A stretch of 64,000 nt of DNA, from the NCBI RefSeq assembly GCF_006345805.1, contig NW_021836142.1:196611-260610 (forward strand). Direction: 5' to 3'. Made by a program: the position numbers and the translations under genes. Each line of letters starts with the position of its first letter. The stretch's first letter is position 1. The notes below the pieces were generated by a model. That model had not been told where the DNA came from. It saw only the letters and a program-made list of their open reading frames with translations, and did not search any database. Of the stretch, positions 2,024 through 60,065 are shown piece after piece. The stretch comes from Octopus sinensis. Taxonomy: Eukaryota.

Positions 2024-2396
2024 ATGTTATCACATTTCATAAAATCTGTATTGAAAGATATTGTAGACAAACAAAGAGTTGAAGTAAAGAAATTAATGAT
2101 TTCAAATGCAAAGACCACAGGGTTCAACTGGGCTAAAGAGTCCTACAACAAGGAAGATAAGTCTTGGTTGCTGATAATATGTGATCTGACATGGTTTCCA
2201 ATTCAAGTGCGGTACAACAAAACTGAAACATTGGAGCTGGATTCTTTGCAAGGAACATTTAAACATGGAAGAACTTTTTACTGAAAATTATTTAAATAGC
2301 AATAATATATCTCTGAGCGCAGTGACTTTTCGTCACTGGAAAAACGATATATATTCGCAAAGGGAGGCCTACTTTTCATTGACAACCGTTGATTGT

Positions 2397-2441
2397 CACA
2401 AGCTGATGACGGGTCAATACTCAGAAACTCGAGTCCGTGTG
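2397..2441 (+). ncRNA. Minimal type-I hammerhead ribozyme (copy 1)
   Basis: CACAAG-CTGATGA-C-GGGT/CAAT/ACTC-A-GAA-ACTCGAGT-C|CGTGTG. The core is intact, helix III is the palindrome ACTCGAGT, the predicted GUC cleavage is after 2435, and stem I has 5/6 pairs. Confidence 0.85.
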
Positions 2442-2670
2442 TATCATAAGTTGAAGACGGGAAGGATGGCTTCCCTTTGCAAATACTGATAGGGCACAGA
2501 AAGTGTGTCTATAGCCAGCTGGAGGAAGTGTCCTCCTGGGGCTACAAGCTACAGTAGCATCCATCCTTAGTGGTTAGCCACATTTAAGTGGCAAATATAC
2601 TTTTCGTCACTGGAAAAACGATATATATTCACAAAGGGAGGCCTACTTTTCATTGACAACCGTTGATTGT

Positions 2671-2715
2671 CACAAGCTGATGACGGGTCAATACTCAGAA
2701 ACTCGAGTCCGTGTG
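2671..2715 (+). ncRNA. Minimal type-I hammerhead ribozyme (copy 2)
   Basis: Identical to copy 1 and 274 nt downstream; predicted cleavage after 2709. Confidence 0.85.
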
Positions 2716-3199
2716 TATCATAAGTTGAAGACGGGAAGGATGGCTTCCCTTTGCAAATACTGATAGGGCACAGAAAGTGTGTCAATAGCCAGCTGGAGGA
2801 AGTGTCCTCCTGGGGCTACAAGCTGCAGTAGCATCCACCCTTAGCGGTTAGCCACATTTAAGTGGCAAATATACTTCACGGTATTTAAATAACCCCAAAT
2901 ACTATCGAATACTTGATAAAAAGTCTATTACCCACCTTTTCTAATATAGGAATTGATAAGAAGACCACTATTTTTCAAGAAGCAATGCTATACAAACAAT
3001 GCTATACAAACAAAATATTACAAGAATGCAGAAGTCACAGAAACAGATATTTGAAAAATGGTCGCTCAAAGCCCCAATATCGACATCAGTAGAGCATGTA
3101 CTGGTATGACTTAATAGCAAATTGTGAGCAAGATGACCAAGCATTTCAGCAATTACAGAACTGTAAAAGGAATTGACTGAAAAGTGAATAAAAACAGAT

Positions 3200-3618
3200 C
3201 TCTTTTACTCTTTTACTCTTTTACTTGTTTCAGTCATTTGACTGCGGCCATGCTGGAGCACCGCCTTTAATCGAGCAACTCGACCACGGGACTTATTCTT
3301 TTGTAAGCCCAGTACTTATTTTATCGGTCTCTTTTTGCCGAACTGCTAAGTAACGGAGACATAAACACACCAGCATCGGTTGTCAAGCAATGCTAGGGGG
3401 ACAAACACAGACACACAAACACACACATGCATATATATACTTATATATATATATACGATGGGCTTCTTTCAGTTTCCGTCTACCAAATCCACTCACAAGG
3501 CTTTGGTCGGCCCGAGGCTATAGTAGAAGACACTTGCCCAAGGTGCCACGCAGTGGGACTGAACCCAGAACCATGTGGTTGGTAAACAAGCTACTTACCA
3601 CACAGCCACTCCTGCGCC
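3200..3618 (-). mobile_element. SINE family A
   Basis: Full-length match. Confidence 0.9.
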
Positions 3619-3834
3619 TATCAGTCAGTTATTGATAATGCAATCAAAATCATGTTTAATTGGGTAAAAGCTGTGATATTAGCTAAAGGTGAGGCTGGAA
3701 CTACAAATTACCAAGAGAGCATTTTATTCCTTTTGGATAAATTTTCATGATGATAATACCAGTTAAATTAATGTTACAGTTCAAGAGCTTCTGTATAAAG
3801 TTTGTGTAAGCAGCCACTATGTGTATGTGTGTAA

Positions 3835-5276: not shown

Positions 5277-5942
5277 TGATGGGAAGTCAAAAATTATTTG
5301 CACTTTCACCATAACATATCTTCATTATTATCACACTGCCTTCTGCACGTGCATGCTTATAGTTGGTACTATAGTGGTCATGTGATCGAAGTTAGAGCAT
5401 AATGGCTCCATTTTTCTTTCTGGCTTTATAGTGTAAGCATGGCCACTCCACTACCAATGTGCACTAAAGAAGAACAAAGAACAGTGATCTGGTTTCTCTG
5501 GTTGGAAGGTGTGTCAGGTACTGAAATTCATTGGAGGCTTTTAGCACAATACGGGGACAGTGCAGTACCATGTAGAAGTGTGTATGAGTGGACTGAGAGG
5601 TTTAAAAGTGGCTGGACAAGTGTGACACATGAAGAGGGAGCAGGACACTCGTCAAGCTCCACCACTGATGGGAAGATTCAGCAAGCTCGGGAGATGGTAA
5701 TGGTGAACTGGTTCACCATTACCATCTTTTGGATCACTGCTTTATGTTCTTCTTTGCTGCACATTGCTAGTGGAGATGCCATGCTTACACTGTAAAGCCA
5801 GAAATAAAAATGGCACGATCAGGCTCAAACTTTGATCACGTAACCACAATAGTACCAAATATAAGCATGACTGTGCAGAAGGTGGTGTGACAATAAAAAG
5901 TATGTTATGGCAAAAGTGCAGATAATTTTTGACTTCTCCTTG
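5277..5942. mobile_element. Non-autonomous mariner derivative made of two left ends (foldback), containing the transposase N-terminal HTH fragment (5439-5710, +)
   Basis: MATPLPMCTKEEQRTVIWFLWLEGVSGTEIHWRLLAQYGDSAVPCRSVYEWTERFKSG matches the mariner HTH region. 5735-5942 is the reverse complement of 5277-5510, with a perfect 17-bp palindrome at 5692-5727 and TA at the right end. Confidence 0.85.
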
Positions 5943-7002: not shown

Positions 7003-7337
7003 ATAGCACTACTGATGCATTTGTACAATCATTGAACCTCCACCATTGATTCCTCTTTGAAATGGTTTCAAGTGTGAACAGTTCTAGCGTCTTTTTCACA
7101 GCCAATTTTTGACATGGTCCAATTCATCAAATACACTATCTGCAAGGACCATCCTTTATTAGATTGTGCACTTGGAAGTTGAAGAACACCAAATCTGGGC
7201 TGCATGGTTTGTGTGACCAGTAACCAGCCCTCTTTACTGATTGTCTAATTTGTTGCCAAATCTTTATGTGGTTGCCCACTATCTTAATCAACGTAGACCG
7301 TTTGCAGATTTTTGTCCAGTCTCTACCTCGTAATGGC

Positions 7338-7760
7338 TCTCTTTACTCTTTTACTCTTTTACTTGTTTCAGCCATTTGACTGTGGCCATGCTGGAGCACC
7401 GCCTTTAGTCGAGCAAATCGACCCAGGGACTTATTCTTTGTAAGCCCAGTACTTATTCTATCGGTCTCTTTTGCTGAACTGCTAAGTGACGGGGACGTAA
7501 ACACACCAGCATCGGTTGTCAAGCAATGCTAGGGGGACAAACACAGACACACAAACATATACACACACACACATATATATATATACATACATATATACGA
7601 CAGGCTTCTTTCAGTTTCCGTCTACCAAATCCACTCACAAGGCATTGGTCGGCGCGGGGCTATAGCAGAAGACACTTGCCCAAGATGCCACGCAGTGGGA
7701 CTGAACCCGGAACCATGTGGTTGGTTAGCAAGCTACTTACCACACAGCCACTCCTGCGCC
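7338..7760 (-). mobile_element. SINE family A
   Basis: Full-length match. Confidence 0.9.
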
Positions 7761-7924
7761 TAAGTTTTTGAGTATCTTTTTTCATCATTTGCTGTGCAAA
7801 GTATAGCCACTTACCAGAAAATTAAGAAGAATGATGCCCTTATCATCCCCAAAGACAATCATCATGACTTTCTGTGTTTATTGCTAGCTGTTGAAATTCT
7901 TAGGCCACAGAGAAGTGGTATGAT

Positions 7925-8287: not shown

Positions 8288-8667
8288 TATGATACTCTTC
8301 TGTGCACTGAGCCTTCATTTTGAGATCAAAAACATATGCCCACATTTCCTCCCCTGTGTTATAAAAAAATGTCTTTGATGGCTTCAATGATTTCCAGTCG
8401 ATTAGAATAAACTTCCATTCTTCTCTCTTCCAAACCAGGTGGCAACTGCCAAGGTACATACTTTGCACACAATTTCTAATTCCCAAAGCCTTCCACCATC
8501 TTCAGTAATATGTTGTGGGAGCAGTCCAGTTGTGCAGAAAACTCATGGATTGTGAATTGTTTGTCTGCAGAAGGTAATTTGTGCACCCACTGACAATCAT
8601 TGTCAGAGGTCACGGCGTAAGGCTTTCCAACTTACTTTAAACTCCTTCATCTGTCTGTGAACATTGC

Positions 8668-17358: not shown

Positions 17359-17659
17359 AATAGATGCATCACTGTTATCGCAGTGCATTACTGAAGATGT
17401 TGGAAGACTGATCTAAGACGAAACGGTGTTGTATCTTTAGGATCTGAAAAAATGAAGGCTCAGTGCATGGAATAGCTTTGCACCTCTTCACTTCAGGTTA
17501 AGAAGTTAAACAGCCAGCAATTGAAACACAAAGGCATGGTAATTGTTTTATGTGTCATTCTTCTTAATTATCTGGAACGAACAAAATGCCCGTCCAATGG
17601 ACGATGCTGAGTTGTCAAATATTTAATCCAAATTTTCTCAAAACAACTTGTCTGACCGT

Positions 17660-25275: not shown

Positions 25276-25848
25276 TAAAAAGTGTGGGATGCTTGTAGCA
25301 CATAGGTGTCCAAAGCAGTCACCCATCAAAGTACTTAACTAGGCTCAATGTTGCTTAATTTCAGTGATCGGATGAGAACTAGTACATTTAGTATATATAT
25401 ATATATATATATATATCCTTAAAATCCTTTAAAACTTTTGCAGCCCAAAGGCTGCAGCCATGCTGGGTCACCACCGTTGAATGACCTACACTAGTATGTG
25501 AAACCACCTCTGATACGTGGCACTTGATCAACAAGGGAGTTCAATGCCGCTGCCCGCATCTGTGTTTCCTGCCAAAGTTATATATAAACACACACAAACA
25601 CGTGTGTGTATGCATATATACTCACACAACATGTATGTTATTGTTTACATTCTTAGACTTTGCTTGCATGGGTCACTCAGAAAAGTGATATTCTTTATCA
25701 CTGAGACAAGCAGAAGAATAATGGCAAGGAATTTAAAGTCAATGAATTTGAAATGCCCCAAAATTAAGCAGATTCTTGTCTCTATAGGCCATGAGTTGAT
25801 ATCCTTTTTTATTTGTTCTTTACCACATTTCACTCTGATTTTCACTAA

Positions 25849-29654: not shown

Positions 29655-30215
29655 ATTTTATTCTTTTACTTGTTTCAGTCATCTGACTGTGGCCATTCTG
29701 AAGCACCACTTTAAAGGGTATTAGTGGAAAAAAGTAACTGACCCCCAGGACTTATTCTTTGTAAGCCTAGTACTTATTCTATCAGTCTCTTTTCCTGAAC
29801 CATTAATTTACAAGGACATAAACACACTAGCATTGGTTGTCAAGTGATGGCTGGGGAGGAGGGAGGCAAACACAGACACACACACTGCACTCACGGAGTG
29901 GTTGGCGTTAGGAAGGGCATCCAGCCGTAGAAACTTTGCCAGATCAGACTGGGCCTGGTGCAGCCTTCTGACTTCCCAGACCCCAGTTGAACTGTCCAAC
30001 CCATGCTAGCATGGAAAGCGGACGCTAAATGATGATGATGATGATATATATACACAACAGACTTCTTCCAGTTTCCATCTACCAAATCCACTCGCAAGGC
30101 TTTGGTTGGCCTGAGGTTATAATAGAAGACAATTTCCCAAGGTGCCATGCAGAGGGATTGAACTCAGAACCATGTGGTTAGGAAGTGGTTAGGAAGTAAG
30201 CTTCTTACCACACAG
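29655..30215 (-). mobile_element. SINE family A with an oppositely oriented RTE-tail repeat (29885-30045) inserted in its microsatellite
   Basis: The two SINE halves flank GTGGTTGGCGTTAGGAAGGGCATCC...(GAT)n. Confidence 0.8.
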
Positions 30216-30299
30216 TCACTAGTTTAAACTCAAGAGTTGTGGCCATGCTAGGCTACTGCCATTAGTTCTGCTACACTTTCATAACTTGAAACCTCCTCT

Positions 30300-31250
30300 G
30301 ATAATTGGTAATCTGCATTTCCTGTCACAAGGTAGGTTCATCTGGAACTCTTGACAGGAGGAAATCTAGTTTTGTTCTGAAAACACCAACATCCATCATG
30401 CATGTCTCTCAAGCTTTTCAGGAGAATATAAAGAATTGTGGGCCCTTGAAGCACCAACTTTCGCAGTGTCTGGTCCTGTACATTAATGACAATGTTGGGA
30501 TCTTTGGCACCCAATTCTGGTGTTTGTGTAAATTTCAGTGTAAAAGTCCTTCCAGGCTTTTCCATATGTATATCAATGCATATCTTTGACATCTTCATGG
30601 TAGGGAGTAGAGTCGACTTTTTCAGCCTTTCCCAGTAGCTAACCTGTTGCAGTGAAACAATCTTCTTTGTGTAGCTTCACTGGATTGCTTTGAGTTCCAC
30701 CATTAACTTTACACTGTGTGGGGACCATAGTTGGAAGCAGTAGTTTGACTGAACACAACTGTCCTTCAGAGGACCATCATGGTTTCTGTTCTCTTACCCT
30801 GAAAGTTCTAAGGATCCATCCGGCCAGCCACCAGCATTTTATTGGCAACTTTGTAATATGCACCTGGAAAGAGAGATAATTTCTCATATCAATGCCCAGG
30901 TTACACACTGATTTTAATTCAAAGATTGAAACCCCTTCCATGGCAATATATCCTATCTGAATTTCATTGAGCTTGATGTGCTGTTAGTAAAGGGCTTGGA
31001 ATTTTCCGTTATTAAACTGCATGTTATTGTTCTAAGCTCACCTATATACTGCTCTGAAATCCTGTGGCAGGTGCATAACATCTCCATGGTTTTTGTATTT
31101 TCTTACAGACTTTTGTATCATCTGCATAGCTAGCAAGGATGGCTATCGAGAGTATATCTGAGAAGGCCACCATGTGGCATTCCTGTGGAATACCACTCAC
31201 TGTTTTGTCTCAAAACATCTGATGCTTTGGATGGGTCTTACATGCCCTCA
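30300..31250 (-). mobile_element. Decayed CR1/L2-like LINE reverse transcriptase
   Basis: Minus-strand ASYADDTKV (YADD at 31117-31128), NNMQFN.GKFQ, GWILRTF, SYWERLK; many stops and frameshifts. Confidence 0.8.
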
Positions 31251-49454: not shown

Positions 49455-49755
49455 ATCATCATCATCATCATCGTTTAACGTCCGCTTTCCATGCTAGCAT
49501 GGGTTGGATGGTTCAACTGGGCACTGGCAAGCCCGAAGGCTGCACCAGGCCAGTCAGATCTGGCAGTGTTTCTACAGCTGGATGCCCTTCCTAATGCCAA
49601 CCACTCCGAGAGTGTAGTGGGTGATTTTATGTGCCACCGACACAGGTGCCAGACGAGGCTGGCAGACGGTCACGCTCGGATGGTGTTTTTTATGTGCCAC
49701 CTACACAGGTGCCAGACGAGGCTGGCAGACGGCTACACTCGGATGGTGTTTTTTA
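49455..49755 (-). mobile_element. RTE 3'-tail repeat with an internal 63-bp tandem duplication (49625-49750)
   Basis: (CAT)n-CGTTTAACGTCCGC... family, also at 4409, 12385, 16580, 29885, 35235 and 61995; it shares its tail with the RTE LINE at 9800-10060. Confidence 0.8.
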
Positions 49756-50234
49756 TGAAAATACAAATATATCTGTGTGCATCTAGGTATCTCTGGATTA
49801 ACACTACTTGTCCAGCAATAAAATTTGTTCAGTCACAGTTAAGCGATATGTGCTCCATTTCAGTGGCTTGGTGTACCAAGATCATTTTGATGCTAAGTCT
49901 TATTTTTCCTAATTAAGATGTATCCACTGGTCTTCGTACATCAAACTACTGAAATACAGAGCATACTGTTTATCTGTGACTTCAACAAATGTTACTGCCA
50001 CCCAAGTAGTGTCAATTTGAAGATTTTCAACACTCCATTCCACAATCATATAGACGATGGACTTCCATATAAAATCTGCCCACACTTGTTTGCTCAAGAC
50101 ACACAAAGAAGTTGTGAGGTGAACTTCTTAACCCCACAAGAAGACAGATGTTTTCATATGGTTATGCTTCATCAGTTATTCACACTGAATCCATTACTTA
50201 TAACTTACTAAGAAGTGCTATTTTTATGTACAAA

Positions 50235-56555: not shown

Positions 56556-57782
56556 GAGCAGCTGATTAAAGCAAATGAATAGGAATCATTTATTGTTGGT
56601 TTCCCATTGCTCTAGAAGCCCCAATATAGAGTTTTTAAAATCTAAGTAGCCTATGTTTGGGTCTAGGATATGAAGCAGCTATGTATAATTTTTTTAAGAA
56701 ATCAGATGAAAGATGTAGAAGTTATTGAGGTACATTAAATGTTTGTACACACATGCACAAACACACAGAAAACTAATTTTATAGATATTAGATTAGATTA
56801 GCTATACATATACATATGTATAGCGCCTCTATGGGAATCAGCTACCAAATACAGCAGGAATTCTCCTTTTACTGGATATACATGTGAAAATTCATTAATA
56901 TACACAGAATTCATATCAAAAATTATTAATACAAGATGGAAGAAACAGATTTTAATCTGAATCACTCACAATTGTTTTTGTGTGTTAGTATCAGTTGGTA
57001 ATTACTGAGTGCTTCACGCATTATACACATTCTTGCATTAATATGATCCAACAATATGTGTACCTGCAAATATTCAGGTGAATGGGCTTCCAGTGCACTA
57101 CTGGATCACCTATAGTTTCCCATTGTTTTATACCTATATACTATTTTTAGCATTCTAATGACAAAGAGTGACACAGAAATACAAAGAGATAAAAAGATAA
57201 AAATGTCAAAAACAAATTGATAGAAAAACAATCAAAAACATAAAATATGAAATAAACAGGCAAAAATAAATCAATGGAAATCAAAAATCAAAAATGTGCA
57301 ATGTAAAATGAACAAATCCCTTATTTAGTCCATTCTCAAGCACAGACATATCTCGACTTTTAAGAAGATAGATGAACACCCTAAGATTATAAAGTTGCAA
57401 ATATATAGGCTGGAAGAATTCCTTATTTCTTGTGTTTGTAAGCATTCTACTTCAAAGGAAATCATTGAAGGAATGATGATTATAATGGGAATAAAGAAAG
57501 CTAACTCTAACTTAAATTCCAATCTGCATAGCTCTATATCTTTAGTTACATCAATCTGTTGTTTACTTAAGCATGACAACAATTATGCTAACCTAATAAG
57601 CTTAATAAAGGTCACATCTTATAGTTTACTCTGGAGTTCAGATTACATGTAGCATCTAACATTACTAAAGAATTATTCTCCACATTAGATAGACATTTCC
57701 CTTAATCCTGTAGATACTATAAAATTTTTAACAGGCATATGATGAAACTGTCCTATGTAATGTCAAATGACCTCAAATATAC

Positions 57783-58196
57783 TCTTTTTCTCTTTTACTC
57801 TTTTACTTGTTTCAGTCATTTGACCGTGGCCATGCTGGAGCACCGCCTTTAGTCGAGCAAATCGACCCCGGGACTTATTCTTTGTAAGCCTAATACTTAT
57901 TCTATTGGTCTCTTTTGCCGAACCGCTAAGTGACGGGGATGTAAACACACCAGCATCGGTTGTCAAGCAATGCTAGGGGGACAAACACAGACACACAAAC
58001 ACACACACATACATATATATATACATATATACGACAGGCTTCTTTCAGTTTCCGTCTACCAAATCCACTCGCAAGGCATTGGTCGGCCCGGGGCTATAGC
58101 AGAAGACACTTGCCCAAGGTGCCATGCAGTGGGACTGAACCTGGAACTATGTGGTTGGTTAGCAAGCTACTTACCACACAGCCACTCCTGCGCCTA
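57783..58196 (-). mobile_element. SINE family A (young)
   Basis: Full length, with CpGs retained. Confidence 0.9.
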
Positions 58197-58524
58197 TAAA
58201 CTTCACAATAGGAAGCTGAATCTAGCAATTGCAAATTCTAAAAATACCTTCCAGAATAGCACGGGTGCAGAAAGGAGGAAAAGACCATAATGATGGACGG
58301 CAAAATCATGGTAGTCCAAATGATCCTCATATAAGCAGAAACATCAACTTTAGCATAGATAATATGAGTAACAGCAGGAGTGTTGTAAATATTAATGATA
58401 AAAATACTGAAAATGACAGTAATGAGAACAATGAAAACAAAAATAGTAACAATAACAACAATAATAATTCCACTTAGAAGAATATCACAAAGGATGACCT
58501 GGTTAAAAACAGTGATATAAAAAT

Positions 58525-58990
58525 GCAATTGTAGGGATAAGAAAGCATGTCCTTTGGCAAACAAGTGTTTGCATAAGAAAATTATATGCAAATTTACTGT
58601 AAGAACAGGTGCACATGTATATGCATATATAGGTGCAACAAGTGACAGCTTCAAGTGTCACTGATGGAACCACACAGTGTCATTTAAGAACAGCTGCAAA
58701 AGACAATGCATATCACTCATGGACCTTATATGGAAACTCAAAGACACAATACAGCATGACTGGAGAGTAATACGAAATGCATACCCATATAATGCATACT
58801 CCAAAGCATGTAACTATTGCTTGAAAGAAACACTAGAAATAGTATTATGCAATGATAACTTCATCAACAAGCACTTTGAAATTAATTTAATATGTTACCA
58901 CCGACTTAAAAGTTCATTTCTGGAATTTAGAAAGAATATGTGGTATTTAACATTATATCAATCCTTTATTTACTATAAAATGTAATTATA
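58525..58990 (+). mobile_element. Penelope-like element GIY-YIG endonuclease remnant
   Basis: CNCRDKKACPLANKCL..IICK...YAYIGATSDSFK...LIWKLKD...YPYNAYSKACNYCLKETLEI...INK...CYH. Confidence 0.85.
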
Positions 58991-59229
58991 GTATTTTGTT
59001 TTCTTTTCATCTTTGTTAGTATGATTATATTGTTGTTTACGTAAATTATACAATTTCATAATAATTTATATGTATGATTATTTAGTGTTATGAATCTGTT
59101 ATTTACTCAGAAATGCAATTATGAGACTTCATTATCATTATTAGTATGTTTAAATTGTTGTTTACCTAAATTGTATGCTGATATATGAAGAGAGAGAGAG
59201 AATATGCTACCAGCATAACTAAGTGATAA

Positions 59230-60065
59230 GTTAAGGCTTAATCATAATTAGGAGAGACTATAGAGACTTTGCATAACAGGCATAAGTGGAGCAAAATTTG
59301 TGCCTATATGAAAAGATTATATTGAAGAATCTTTTATGGTGGTGAAGGATAGTGAGCGATTCCCTTGAACACAATTTACAAACATGGTGGTTAATATTGT
59401 ATGGTGAAATCTCATAAACAATGGACCAGGATAAGGTATTGGGAATGGGACTTGAGTTTGTGTAGAGAGTTGAGTTAGAAAGTGTGGGGGCTTGATTTGA
59501 AAATGAATTCATGTGAACCCAGTAGTGATGCTTGAAATCAATAATGCTTCAAGCATAAATGCTAGCCTGGTTGGAACATAGTGATATTACCTGGCATTTA
59601 TATACGACACAATGGTATAAACAAAAATGATCGAATGGACAAAATTGGGAGCGTTGGGAGTTGTAGGTTTTCCTACTAATGGTGGGCTTAGGATTGATCC
59701 CTATTCTGGTTTGGCTCCTATGACCTGTTTCCTCAACGAAGGACCAGAGGTGTTATAATTACCAGTGTTGGGCTGGAAGAGGGCATGTGGTCAGGTTGTT
59801 AGTATCAGGGGTGTTGTTATTGTAGTATTATCAGATGGGTTGAGGAAGTGTCCAGGAGGATAGATCATAAAGCCCACTACAAGGAGGCTTAGTTTGTGCC
59901 TATAAGAGGAAGCAATTATAGTTCCCAAGTTTCGTGTTGTAGAATAGATTTTAATCAAAATTTTATTAAAGATGGAGTAGTATTTGTGTTATGGTGGAAA
60001 ACTGGAGCCCAGGATTTCTTGTATAAGTAAAGATATAGCCTGAAGAGAGAATAGTTGTGTGCACA
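59230..60065 (-). mobile_element. Penelope-like element RT-thumb/linker/GIY-YIG remnant
   Basis: SFPP*HKYYSIFNKILIKIYSTTRNLGTII ... DFKHHYWVHMNSF ... LSWSIVYEISPYNINHHVCKLCSRESLTIL. Confidence 0.8.

What the first reader, a model, noticed from the sequence alone, without database searches (positions are those of the whole stretch)
2299..2881. Retrozyme-like tandem dimer: 274-bp structured unit with one hammerhead per unit and a 10-bp TSD
Seen: two ~98%-identical 274-bp units head-to-tail, each with an intact type-I hammerhead core (CTGATGA...GAAAC TCGA GTC), cleavage sites at 2435 and 2709 exactly one unit apart, and helix III as the palindrome ACTCGAGT. The rest of the unit is packed with hairpins: an 18-bp stem (2352-2369/2468-2485) enclosing the ribozyme, TGACAA/TTGTCA, GGCACA/TGTGTC, GGAGGA/TCCTCC with TAGCC/GGCTA, GCTA/TAGC (copy 2 change keeps a GU pair) and GCCAC/GTGGC. 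TATTTAAATA flanks the insert, and its removal restores the host LINE frame. Established: minimal type-I hammerheads with palindromic helix III self-cleave as double hammerheads in tandem repeats (newt satellite 2, Penelope pLTRs), and metazoan non-LTR retrozymes are 150-400-nt tandem units that yield circular RNAs. Inference: a non-coding, self-cleaving, probably circRNA-forming mobile element copied by reverse transcription of a circle or multimer. The PLE remnants in this window suggest the kind of RT that could be borrowed. I cannot tell whether this family is already catalogued in octopus.
Basis: partly seen in the sequence, partly recalled or inferred. Interest (0 to 1): 0.92.

Follow-up and report, generated by a model that had tools for sequence, protein, structure and literature searches.

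The report
Retrozyme-like tandem insert, weak hammerhead
A 583-bp mobile-element insertion in an octopod genome consists of two copies of a highly folded 274-bp unit, each carrying a degenerate self-cleaving-ribozyme (hammerhead) motif; it fits a known class of parasitic elements (animal retrozymes), but whether its ribozyme works is unproven.

Summary
The sequence observation holds. Two 274-bp units lie head to tail (5 differences). Exact 10-bp TATTTAAATA copies flank the 583-bp insert, and that 10-mer occurs nowhere else in the window. Each unit has the hammerhead boxes in type-I order with a palindromic helix III (ACUCGAGU). Such a motif arises in only 7 of 60,000 shuffles of the unit.

"Intact hammerhead" is too strong. 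Rfam Hammerhead_1 scores 15.9 bits against a threshold of 34. Helix II is 4 weak pairs flanked by an unpaired C and an unpaired A next to G12. Its predicted pairing probability is about 0.01, against 0.94-0.97 for canonical hammerheads with the same helix III.

The "restores a host LINE frame" claim is unsupported. The "PLE remnants" claim is supported: decayed Hydra-clade-like endonuclease remnants lie at 57.6-59.7 kb, unrelated in sequence to the unit.

No other copy could be found, because the host genome (an octopod, not Argonauta hians) is not in the searchable collections.

Best reading: a non-autonomous retrozyme-type element, copied from a more-than-unit-length (circular or multimeric) RNA. 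It is a new member of a known kind. Ribozyme activity and circular RNA remain untested.

The parts
2289..2298 (.). Left target-site duplication TATTTAAATA (itself a perfect palindrome)
   Evidence: Read directly. This 10-mer occurs only twice in the window, both times abutting the insert.
2299..2324 (+). 26-nt 'head' that is not part of the repeat unit. With 2333-2358 it forms an imperfect foldback (CAGTGAC/GTCACTG plus an AT-rich arm).
   Evidence: It does not match the unit end. Its best semi-global placement anywhere on the unit is the adjacent inverted position. That placement gives p=13/5000 for this geometry but only 368/3000 unit-wide, and the local-alignment test was not significant. 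Suggestive only.
2325..2598 (+). Repeat unit 1 (274 bp)
   Evidence: TRF; blastn and direct comparison.
2599..2872 (+). Repeat unit 2 (274 bp), with 5 substitutions relative to unit 1 (4 transitions, 1 transversion)
2873..2881 (+). Start of a third unit (ACTT, 2873-2876) followed by 5 nt (CACGG) that diverge from the unit. This is the 3' end of the insert.
2397..2441 (+). Hammerhead-like motif 1. Helix I is 2397-2402/2436-2441 (5 of 6 pairs). The core CUGAUGA is 2403-2409. C2410 is unpaired. Helix II is GGGU/ACUC at 2411-2414/2419-2422, with loop CAAU. A2423 is unpaired. GAAA is 2424-2427. Helix III is AC/GU with loop UCGA, 2427-2434. The predicted cleavage is after C2435.
   Evidence: Own descriptor. 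Rfam Hammerhead_1 at 15.9 bits, full model 1-45, in this register.
2671..2715 (+). Hammerhead-like motif 2, identical in sequence to motif 1; predicted cleavage after C2709
2352..2485 (+). Long stem (2352-2369 with 2468-2485) that encloses the hammerhead domain of unit 1. The counterpart in unit 2 is 2626-2643 with 2742-2759.
   Evidence: Inverted-repeat scan, 89% and 83% complementary. Pairing probability about 0.6 in the two-unit transcript. Present in the MFE structures.
2882..2891 (.). Right target-site duplication TATTTAAATA
57613..58913 (+). CONTEXT, not part of the element: decayed remnant of a PLE-like RT/endonuclease ORF. The pieces are 57613-57930 and 58473-58913, split by a SINE-like insertion. 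The endonuclease carries the Hydra-clade signature CxCX5C.
   Evidence: tblastn with relatives. An exhaustive HMMER search found 1,734 relatives, best E=2.3e-17. Motifs compared with PMC8557442. Not recognised by Pfam or by PDB sequence search.
59333..59695 (-). CONTEXT: second, inverted copy of the same endonuclease-like remnant, tail to tail with the first
   Evidence: tblastn, E about 1e-7.

Best explanation
The 583-bp insert is one integration event of a small, non-coding, non-autonomous retroelement of the animal 'non-LTR retrozyme' type. These are hammerhead-bearing tandem units thought to be mobilised by Penelope-like elements (PLEs).

Proposed mechanism, with the basis for each step:
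1. INFERRED: a tandem master copy is transcribed.
2. INFERRED from the motif: adjacent units pair through the ACUCGAGU palindrome to form a double hammerhead and cleave after C17, giving 274-nt monomers. In this copy helix II is weak, so cleavage may be slow or absent.
3. ESTABLISHED for other retrozymes (PMC7229834), inferred here: a host tRNA ligase circularises the monomer into a highly base-paired circle.
4. INFERRED from the anatomy: a borrowed RT/endonuclease nicks an AT-rich target. It then copies more than two unit lengths of a circular or uncleaved multimeric template.
5. SHOWN: the result is a concatemer of 2 x 274 + 4 nt with a 10-bp target-site duplication.

Both cleavage-site junctions are intact inside the units. 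Both ends of the repeat fall at the same unit phase, 111 nt upstream of the cleavage site. The template was therefore not a linear, ribozyme-cut monomer.
For: - Tandem dimer and TSD.
- The hammerhead-like motif is strongly non-random: 2 hits against 0.047 expected per 64 kb, and 7 of 60,000 shuffles of the unit.
- The best Rfam family for the segment is Hammerhead_1, full length and in register.
- The motif has three of the four non-descriptor features listed for PLE hammerheads in PMC4209133: an extra nucleotide after A9, G10.1-C11.1, and a palindromic helix III/loop 3.
- The inter-unit helix III has probability 0.25 and costs only +0.4 kcal/mol to enforce in the two-unit transcript. It also appears in the cofold MFE.
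- The unit is 44.5% GC against 33.8% for the window, and folds with z about -3.4 to -3.6.
- There is no coding signal.
- The five differences between the units argue against an assembly duplication.
- Hydra-clade-like PLE remnants are present in the same window. That clade is reported in Mollusca, carries hammerheads and prefers (TA)n-type targets.
- The locus fits the operational definition of an 'active' dimer in bioRxiv 10.64898/2026.07.22.740005, provided a relaxed helix II is accepted.
Against: - The hammerhead is below the Rfam threshold (15.9 against 34 bits).
- An unpaired A sits directly 5' of G12, the general base (PMC6155905). I found no documented natural precedent for an insertion there.
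- Helix II pairing probability is 0.004-0.008, against 0.94-0.97 in canonical comparators with the same helix III.
- The monomer hammerhead fold evaluates at +0.5 kcal/mol, against an MFE of -9.4.
- No second copy exists in the window, and none was found in any searchable collection.
- The PLE remnant has no hammerhead and no similarity to the unit.
- The two hammerheads are identical, so there is no covariation evidence.
Confidence: 0.6

Rival explanations
1. A single-unit retroposed element (SINE-like or a PLE-derived solo fragment) inserted with the TSD. It was later duplicated in place at the DNA level by slippage or unequal exchange. The hammerhead boxes are an inherited relic with no present activity, and no circular RNA or rolling-circle reverse transcription is involved.
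For: - There are only 2.0 copies.
- The units have diverged by 1.8%.
- The hammerhead is predicted to fold poorly.
- No other copy is available to show multimers elsewhere.
Against: - The repeat runs 4 nt into a third unit, and both ends share the same unit phase. This is what more-than-unit-length copying gives and is not expected from an internal duplication.
- The duplication would have to cover 274 bp of an element only about 309 bp long.
- Dimers are the commonest multimeric state of described retrozyme families.
Confidence: 0.2
2. The insert is a severely deleted or 5'-truncated autonomous Penelope-like element, of which only tandem pLTR-type sequence with its hammerhead survives. It is not a dedicated non-autonomous family.
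For: - PLE insertions are partial tandems with variable TSDs, an optional 30-40-bp tail at one end and often an adjacent inverted truncated copy.
- The 26-nt head and its possible foldback resemble that signature.
- PLE remnants exist in this genome.
Against: - There is no ORF remnant between or beside the units.
- The two units are directly adjacent, whereas pLTRs flank an ORF.
- Helix II is 4 bp, whereas PLE min-hammerheads typically have 6-8 bp.
- The unit has no similarity to the PLE remnant in the window.
Confidence: 0.1
3. The locus is an ordinary tandem duplication or minisatellite in which a hammerhead-like string arose by chance.
For: - Rfam finds no hammerhead at its curated threshold.
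- A relaxed descriptor gives about 0.05 chance hits per 64-kb window.
Against: - The chance of the motif landing in this particular 274-nt unit is about 1e-4.
- The TSD 10-mer occurs only at the two insert boundaries.
- The unit has foreign base composition and an unusually stable fold.
- Helix III is an 8-nt perfect palindrome identical to that of canonical hammerheads found in other organisms.
Confidence: 0.05

Closest known systems
Metazoan non-LTR retrozymes (Cervera & de la Pena 2020, PMC7229834; Li, Clavereau & Pollet 2026 preprint, 10.64898/2026.07.22.740005)
   Same: Head-to-tail units of a few hundred bp (here 274), with one type-I hammerhead motif per unit. GC below 45-50%. No LTR, PBS, PPT or ORF. 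TSD longer than 4 bp. The RNA is predicted to be highly self-paired. PLE sequences co-occur in the same genome. The dimer is the minimal 'active' arrangement.
   Different: The hammerhead is below the Rfam threshold and has unpaired C and A flanking a weak 4-bp helix II. Copy number, expression and circularity are unknown. No cephalopod example appears in the searchable literature; the studied mollusc (mussel) has 350-390-bp units.
Dimeric ('double') hammerheads of newt/axolotl satellite 2 and PLE min-hammerheads (Cervera & de la Pena 2014, PMC4209133)
   Same: Helix III of 1-2 bp capped by a palindromic tetraloop, so that two copies can form an extended helix III (here 8 bp, ACUCGAGU). There is an extra nucleotide between A9 and 10.1, followed by G10.1-C11.1.
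   Different: There is an additional unpaired A between C11.1 and G12. Helix II is only 4 bp, whereas PLE min-hammerheads have 6-8 bp. The motif is not located in the pLTR of an ORF-bearing PLE.
Canonical type-I hammerheads with the same helix III found in metagenome contigs (Ga0126336 family, 18 contigs; L001, a 662-nt unit)
   Same: Identical GAAAC-UCGA-GUC helix III and loop, identical CUGAUGA box, and type-I topology.
   Different: Their helix II (GGUUC/GAACC or GGCC/GGCC) abuts A9 and G12 directly. They fold into the textbook double hammerhead with helix II probability 0.94-0.97, against 0.008 here. They share no sequence similarity with the unit outside the core.
Hydra-clade Penelope-like elements (Craig et al. 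2021, PMC8557442)
   Same: This is a candidate class of RT/endonuclease donor. Remnants with its endonuclease signature lie in the same window. The clade is reported from Mollusca, carries hammerheads and inserts into TA-rich targets.
   Different: The remnant here is decayed, has no detectable hammerhead and shares no sequence with the unit. The link is circumstantial.

Membership tests
Hammerhead ribozyme, type I (Rfam RF00163) | Conserved core boxes CUGANGA ... GAAA ... UH in type-I order, with helices I, II and III | tested here: met
   2403-2435 and 2677-2709. Helix I has 5 of 6 pairs, helix II 4 bp and helix III 2 bp plus a tetraloop.
Hammerhead ribozyme, type I (Rfam RF00163) | Score at or above the curated gathering threshold (34 bits) | tested here: not met
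   No hit at the gathering score or at E<=10 on 801 nt. 15.9 bits, E=0.12, when only 76 nt are searched.
Hammerhead ribozyme, type I (Rfam RF00163) | Helix II closes directly on A9 and G12 with a 10.1-11.1 pair | tested here: not met
   C2410 and A2423 are unpaired on either side of GGGU/ACUC. The strict descriptor gives 0 hits.
Hammerhead ribozyme, type I (Rfam RF00163) | Compensatory changes in the helices across homologues | not testable with these tools
   The two copies are identical in the motif, and no other homologue could be retrieved.
Hammerhead ribozyme, type I (Rfam RF00163) | Site-specific Mg2+-dependent self-cleavage | not testable with these tools
   Needs in vitro transcription. 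Thermodynamic prediction is unfavourable for helix II.
PLE-type / dimeric minimal hammerhead (PMC4209133) | [quoted passage not shown] | tested here: inconclusive
   C2410 followed by G2411...C2422 fits. A further unpaired A2423 before G12 is not part of the published consensus.
PLE-type / dimeric minimal hammerhead (PMC4209133) | Palindromic 15.2-16.2 and loop 3, allowing an extended helix III between two copies | tested here: met
   ACUCGAGU is a perfect 8-nt palindrome. The inter-copy helix appears in the cofold MFE and has probability 0.25 in the two-unit transcript.
PLE-type / dimeric minimal hammerhead (PMC4209133) | Located in the pLTR of an element encoding RT and GIY-YIG endonuclease | tested here: not met
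   No coding remnant in or beside the insert.
Metazoan non-LTR retrozyme | Tandem repeat of a few hundred bp with at least two consecutive units each carrying a complete type-I hammerhead | tested here: inconclusive
   Tandem 274 bp x 2.0 with one motif per unit. Whether the motif counts as 'complete' depends on accepting the unpaired C and A. RNAfold MFE of the motif is -9.4 kcal/mol, below the -5 cut-off used in the 2026 preprint.
Metazoan non-LTR retrozyme | Low GC (below 45-50%), non-coding, no LTR/PBS/PPT, highly self-paired RNA | tested here: met
   GC 44.5%. Circular MFE -82.6 kcal/mol, z=-3.4; linear z=-3.6. No protein homologues of any frame.
Metazoan non-LTR retrozyme | Target-site duplication longer than the 4 bp of plant retrozymes, when present | tested here: met
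   Exact 10-bp TSD.
Metazoan non-LTR retrozyme | Multiple dispersed genomic copies (monomers to multimers) | not testable with these tools
   None in the window. The host genome is not in the available collections; the nearest reachable DNA, 20 kb of Argonauta hians, has none.
Metazoan non-LTR retrozyme | Expression as linear and circular RNA of unit length | not testable with these tools
   No transcriptome access.
Metazoan non-LTR retrozyme | Co-occurrence with PLEs in the same genome | tested here: met
   Hydra-clade-like RT/EN remnants at 57613-58913 (+) and 59333-59695 (-). They are decayed, so they show only past presence.

The most novel reading that the evidence does not exclude
The unit represents an octopod retrozyme family whose hammerhead naturally carries a bulged C after A9 and an extra A next to the general base G12. 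It nevertheless self-cleaves, but only as an obligate double hammerhead held together by the 8-bp ACUCGAGU helix. The family would yield 274-nt circular RNAs and be mobilised by Hydra-clade PLEs through rolling-circle reverse transcription. This TSD-bounded 2.01-unit copy, with its foldback head, would then be a clean fossil of that process. That would add a new natural core variant to the hammerhead repertoire and a first cephalopod retrozyme with defined integration ends.
Probability: 0.15. Interest if true: 0.55.

Novelty: new member of a known kind. Interest (0 to 1): 0.4.

Why it matters
If confirmed, this would extend hammerhead retrozymes to cephalopods; none is described in the literature I could search.

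The locus is unusually legible. A single dimer sits between perfect TSDs. Its ends fall at the same unit phase, far from the ribozyme cut site, and it has a short non-repeat head. That anatomy bears on an open question for this class: whether integration copies a circular or an uncleaved multimeric RNA, and where reverse transcription starts.

The non-canonical junction of helix II would also be a natural test of how much the hammerhead core tolerates next to G12.

If the ribozyme proves dead, the locus is simply one more decayed repeat in a repeat-rich genome.

Tried and rejected
1. Finding other copies. All of these gave nothing:
- blastn of the unit against the window.
- A six-frame pseudo-protein of the unit against the 5.8-billion-protein collection.
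- Exact look-ups of the two unit-spanning ORFs.
- Exact and helix-II-tolerant hammerhead strings against viral, metagenome and prokaryote genome collections.
- 20 kb of Argonauta hians DNA.

2. 'Host LINE'. Pfam on all six frames of the reconstructed empty site found nothing, and there is no paralogous empty site in the window.

3. tRNA-derived SINE origin. ARAGORN finds no tRNA.

4. Other ribozyme families or a minus-strand hammerhead. Rfam at E<=10 and my descriptor find none.

5. 'The head is an inverted copy of the unit'. A local-alignment test rejected it. A semi-global test restricted to the adjacent position gave p about 0.003, but the hypothesis was post hoc and the unit-wide p is 0.12. 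I keep it only as suggestive.

6. 'One CpG-to-CpA hit broke a canonical helix II'. Reverting A2423 to G does not restore a hammerhead fold (helix II probability 0.02). Rejected.

7. Linking the unit to the PLE remnant in the window. The remnant's 3' region has no hammerhead and no similarity to the unit.

8. Linking hammerheads with the same helix III to Hydra-type PLEs. The metagenome contigs encode no such protein.

9. Naming the PLE-like relatives. Pfam and PDB sequence searches recognise nothing. The word-indexed search failed on the decayed remnant. Clade assignment rests on motif comparison with PMC8557442.
Full report
WHAT IS IN THE SEQUENCE

Tandem Repeats Finder reports a 274-bp period, 2.0 copies and 98% matches at 2325-2876. 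It is by far the highest-scoring long-period repeat in the window. Direct comparison gives 5 substitutions in 274 positions, 4 transitions and 1 transversion. Those differences also argue against a simple assembly duplication.

- a 26-nt head that is not part of the unit (2299-2324);
- two full units (2325-2598 and 2599-2872);
- four bases of a third unit (ACTT);
- five divergent bases (CACGG).

It is bounded by exact TATTTAAATA copies at 2289-2298 and 2882-2891. That 10-mer is a perfect palindrome and occurs nowhere else in the 64 kb. The target-site duplication is therefore real.

The unit is 44.5% GC in a 33.8% GC window. It has no other copy in the window.

THE HAMMERHEAD CLAIM

The conserved boxes are present in type-I order at 2403-2435 and 2677-2709. 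The predicted scissile bonds, after C2435 and C2709, are exactly one unit apart.

A descriptor I wrote required helix I with at least 5 of 6 pairs, CUGANGA, helix II of at least 3 bp, GAAA, helix III and UH. It finds only these two sites in the window. Random 64-kb sequences give 0.047 hits, and dinucleotide shuffles of the unit itself give a hit in 7 of 60,000. The motif is not a chance feature.

It is, however, not an intact canonical hammerhead:
- Rfam reports no hammerhead at gathering thresholds, or at E<=10 over 2200-3000.
- When only 76 nt are searched, Hammerhead_1 (RF00163) becomes the top hit. It is full length and in the same register, but scores 15.9 bits against a threshold of 34, with helix II left unaligned.
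- The reason is visible in the sequence: CUGAUGA-C-GGGU-CAAU-ACUC-A-GAAAC-UCGA-GUC.
- The C after A9, the G10.1-C11.1 pair and the palindromic helix III/loop 3 match features that Cervera and de la Pena list for PLE-associated hammerheads (PMC4209133).
- The unpaired A directly 5' of G12 does not. G12 is the general base (PMC6155905).
- Helix II has only four pairs, one of them G-U.

I calibrated the fold against real hammerheads. A general scan of metagenome contigs for CTGATGA-N(9-18)-GAAACTCGAGTC recovered two useful comparators. One is an 18-contig family from one sample (Ga0126336). The other is a 662-nt unit assembled 1.9 times at 100% identity (L001). Both have a canonical helix II and the same helix III.

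Folded the same way, two copies of these comparators give the textbook double hammerhead, with helix II probabilities of 0.94-0.97 and helix I around 0.9. The window's motif forms only the shared 8-bp inter-copy helix III. Its helix II probability is 0.008 and helix I is at most 0.35.

In the full 583-nt transcript:
- the inter-unit helix III has probability 0.25 and costs +0.4 kcal/mol to enforce;
- the long stem enclosing the ribozyme has probability 0.6;
- helix II has probability 0.004, because ACUC prefers to pair with GAGU.

Reverting A2423 to G, a plausible CpG-decay reversal, does not rescue the fold. The two units carry the same motif, so the defect, if it is one, was already in the template.

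THE REST OF THE UNIT

The 18-nt stem 2352-2369/2468-2485 is 89% complementary in unit 1 and 83% in unit 2, where the G2357-to-A change breaks a pair.

Overall the 274-nt RNA folds with z = -3.6 as a linear molecule starting at the cleavage site and z = -3.4 as a circle. The complementary strand folds about as well (z = -4.1).

No frame of the unit has any protein homologue, and there is no tRNA-like gene.

THE ENDS OF THE INSERT

The repeat-homologous part is 552 nt, which is 2 x 274 + 4. It starts and ends at the same phase of the unit, 111 nt upstream of the predicted cleavage site. Both cleavage-site junctions are intact inside the units.

A linear, ribozyme-cut monomer or dimer would have ends at the cut site. 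The template was therefore either a circle or an uncleaved multimer, copied for a little over two turns or units.

The 26-nt head is unrelated to the unit by local alignment. Its best semi-global placement is exactly the adjacent inverted position, giving a foldback with 2333-2358. For that geometry p is about 0.003; unit-wide it is 0.12. This recalls the tails and adjacent inverted copies described for PLE insertions (PMC8557442 and PMC11167929). The test was post hoc, so I treat it as unresolved.

SURROUNDINGS AND HOST

The claim that removing the insert restores a LINE reading frame is not supported. Pfam finds nothing in any of the six frames of the reconstructed empty site. The flanks 2030-3200 are unique sequence lying between two copies of a SINE-like repeat that has more than 20 copies in the window.

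A LINE-type RT remnant (SGIPQ...YADDTK) does exist, but near 30-31 kb.

The claim of PLE remnants is supported:
- 57613-57930 and 58473-58913 (+), and an inverted copy at 59695-59333 (-), match proteins with an RT-like block followed by a C-terminal nuclease.
- An exhaustive HMMER search finds 1,734 relatives, best E = 2.3e-17.
- Their motifs are CxCX5C, no cysteines between the GIY-like and YIG motifs, CxxC and CxH. This is the signature Craig et al. give for the Hydra clade. That clade is reported from Mollusca, carries hammerheads and inserts into TA-type targets.
- Pfam and PDB sequence searches do not recognise these proteins.
- The remnant is full of stops, has no hammerhead in its 3' region and shares nothing with the unit. 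It shows only that such elements have lived in this genome.

The conserved core of the SINE-like repeat matches a single database protein, from Argonauta hians at 78% identity. That 20-kb Argonauta locus holds only one partial core copy and no retrozyme unit. The host is therefore an octopod, but not that species. 'Octopus' is plausible but not proven here.

COMPARISON WITH WHAT IS KNOWN

Metazoan non-LTR retrozymes are defined by these features (PMC7229834):
- tandem units of about 150-450 bp, each with a type-I hammerhead;
- low GC;
- no LTR, PBS or PPT;
- TSDs longer than 4 bp when present;
- abundant, highly paired circular RNAs;
- co-occurrence with PLEs.

A 2026 preprint shows that vertebrate retrozymes are sister to PLE pLTRs. 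[quoted passage not shown]

This locus meets the architectural criteria. It fails the curated ribozyme threshold. It cannot be tested for copy number or expression with the tools available.

I found no cephalopod retrozyme in the searchable literature, but Repbase and Dfam were not available to me.

VERDICT

This is a genuine, TSD-flanked insertion of a retrozyme-type tandem element carrying a degenerate type-I hammerhead. It is best described as a new member of a known kind.

Confidence by claim:
- The mobile-element reading is well supported.
- The reading of rolling-circle or multimer reverse transcription is a reasonable inference from the ends.
- Self-cleavage and circular RNA are unproven.

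Noticed in passing
window 25290-25408 (-): A 5S rRNA match just above Rfam's gathering score (39.4 against 38 bits). Its 5' end is replaced by (AT)n, which suggests a 5S pseudogene or a 5S-derived SINE rather than a working gene.
   Followed up: no
window, more than 20 sites (e.g. 1618-2028, 3200-3621, 7337-7766, 57782-58197): A very abundant SINE-like repeat of about 0.5 kb, with copies 75-93% identical. It carries a conserved ORF-like core (…[27 protein letters not shown]…). Only the ~100-bp core is shared with Argonauta hians.
   Followed up: partly
window 57613-59695: Two tail-to-tail inverted remnants of a PLE-like RT/endonuclease with the Hydra-clade endonuclease signature (CxCX5C, no CC between the GIY-like and YIG motifs). 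The plus-strand copy is split by a SINE-like insertion. Pfam does not recognise this protein family at all, even in 813-aa relatives.
   Followed up: partly
window about 30000-31200 (-): A decayed LINE-type reverse transcriptase remnant (…SGIPQECHMVAF…YADDTKVCKK… and a C-terminal …LWSPHSVKLMVELKAIQ…SYWERLKK… block), seen in translation only.
   Followed up: no
window 5439-5795 (+): An intact 118-aa ORF with a Mos1-type HTH_48 domain (E=3.9e-7), the N-terminal piece of a mariner-like transposase.
   Followed up: no
L001 (metagenome contig Ga0049110_10014201, 1275 nt): The whole contig is a 662-nt unit repeated 1.9 times at 100% identity, which looks like a circular molecule assembled past its origin. 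Each unit has a canonical type-I hammerhead (helix II GGCC/GGCC, helix III ACUCGAGU). It is a candidate viroid-like or retrozyme circle.
   Followed up: partly
L007-L051 (18 contigs of metagenome Ga0126336): A dispersed family of single, well-conserved canonical type-I hammerheads (GGAGCAA-CUGAUGA-GGUUCACUGAAGAACC-GAAACUCGAGUC-UUGCUU) in about 40% GC contigs. This is presumably host (animal) DNA in a host-associated metagenome. They are not tandem, and no PLE protein is nearby.
   Followed up: partly
window 8473-8505 (-), 17391-17423 (+) and others: The hammerhead core string CTGANGA-N(6-30)-GAAA occurs 9 times against 3 expected (0 of 100 shuffles reach 9). Besides the two retrozyme copies, two sites share CTGAAGATGKTGGAAG and may belong to one repeat family. 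None passes the full descriptor.
   Followed up: no
window 49625-49757: A 63-bp tandem repeat, 2.1 copies, 94% matches and GC-rich relative to its surroundings, inside a 141-aa ORF.
   Followed up: no
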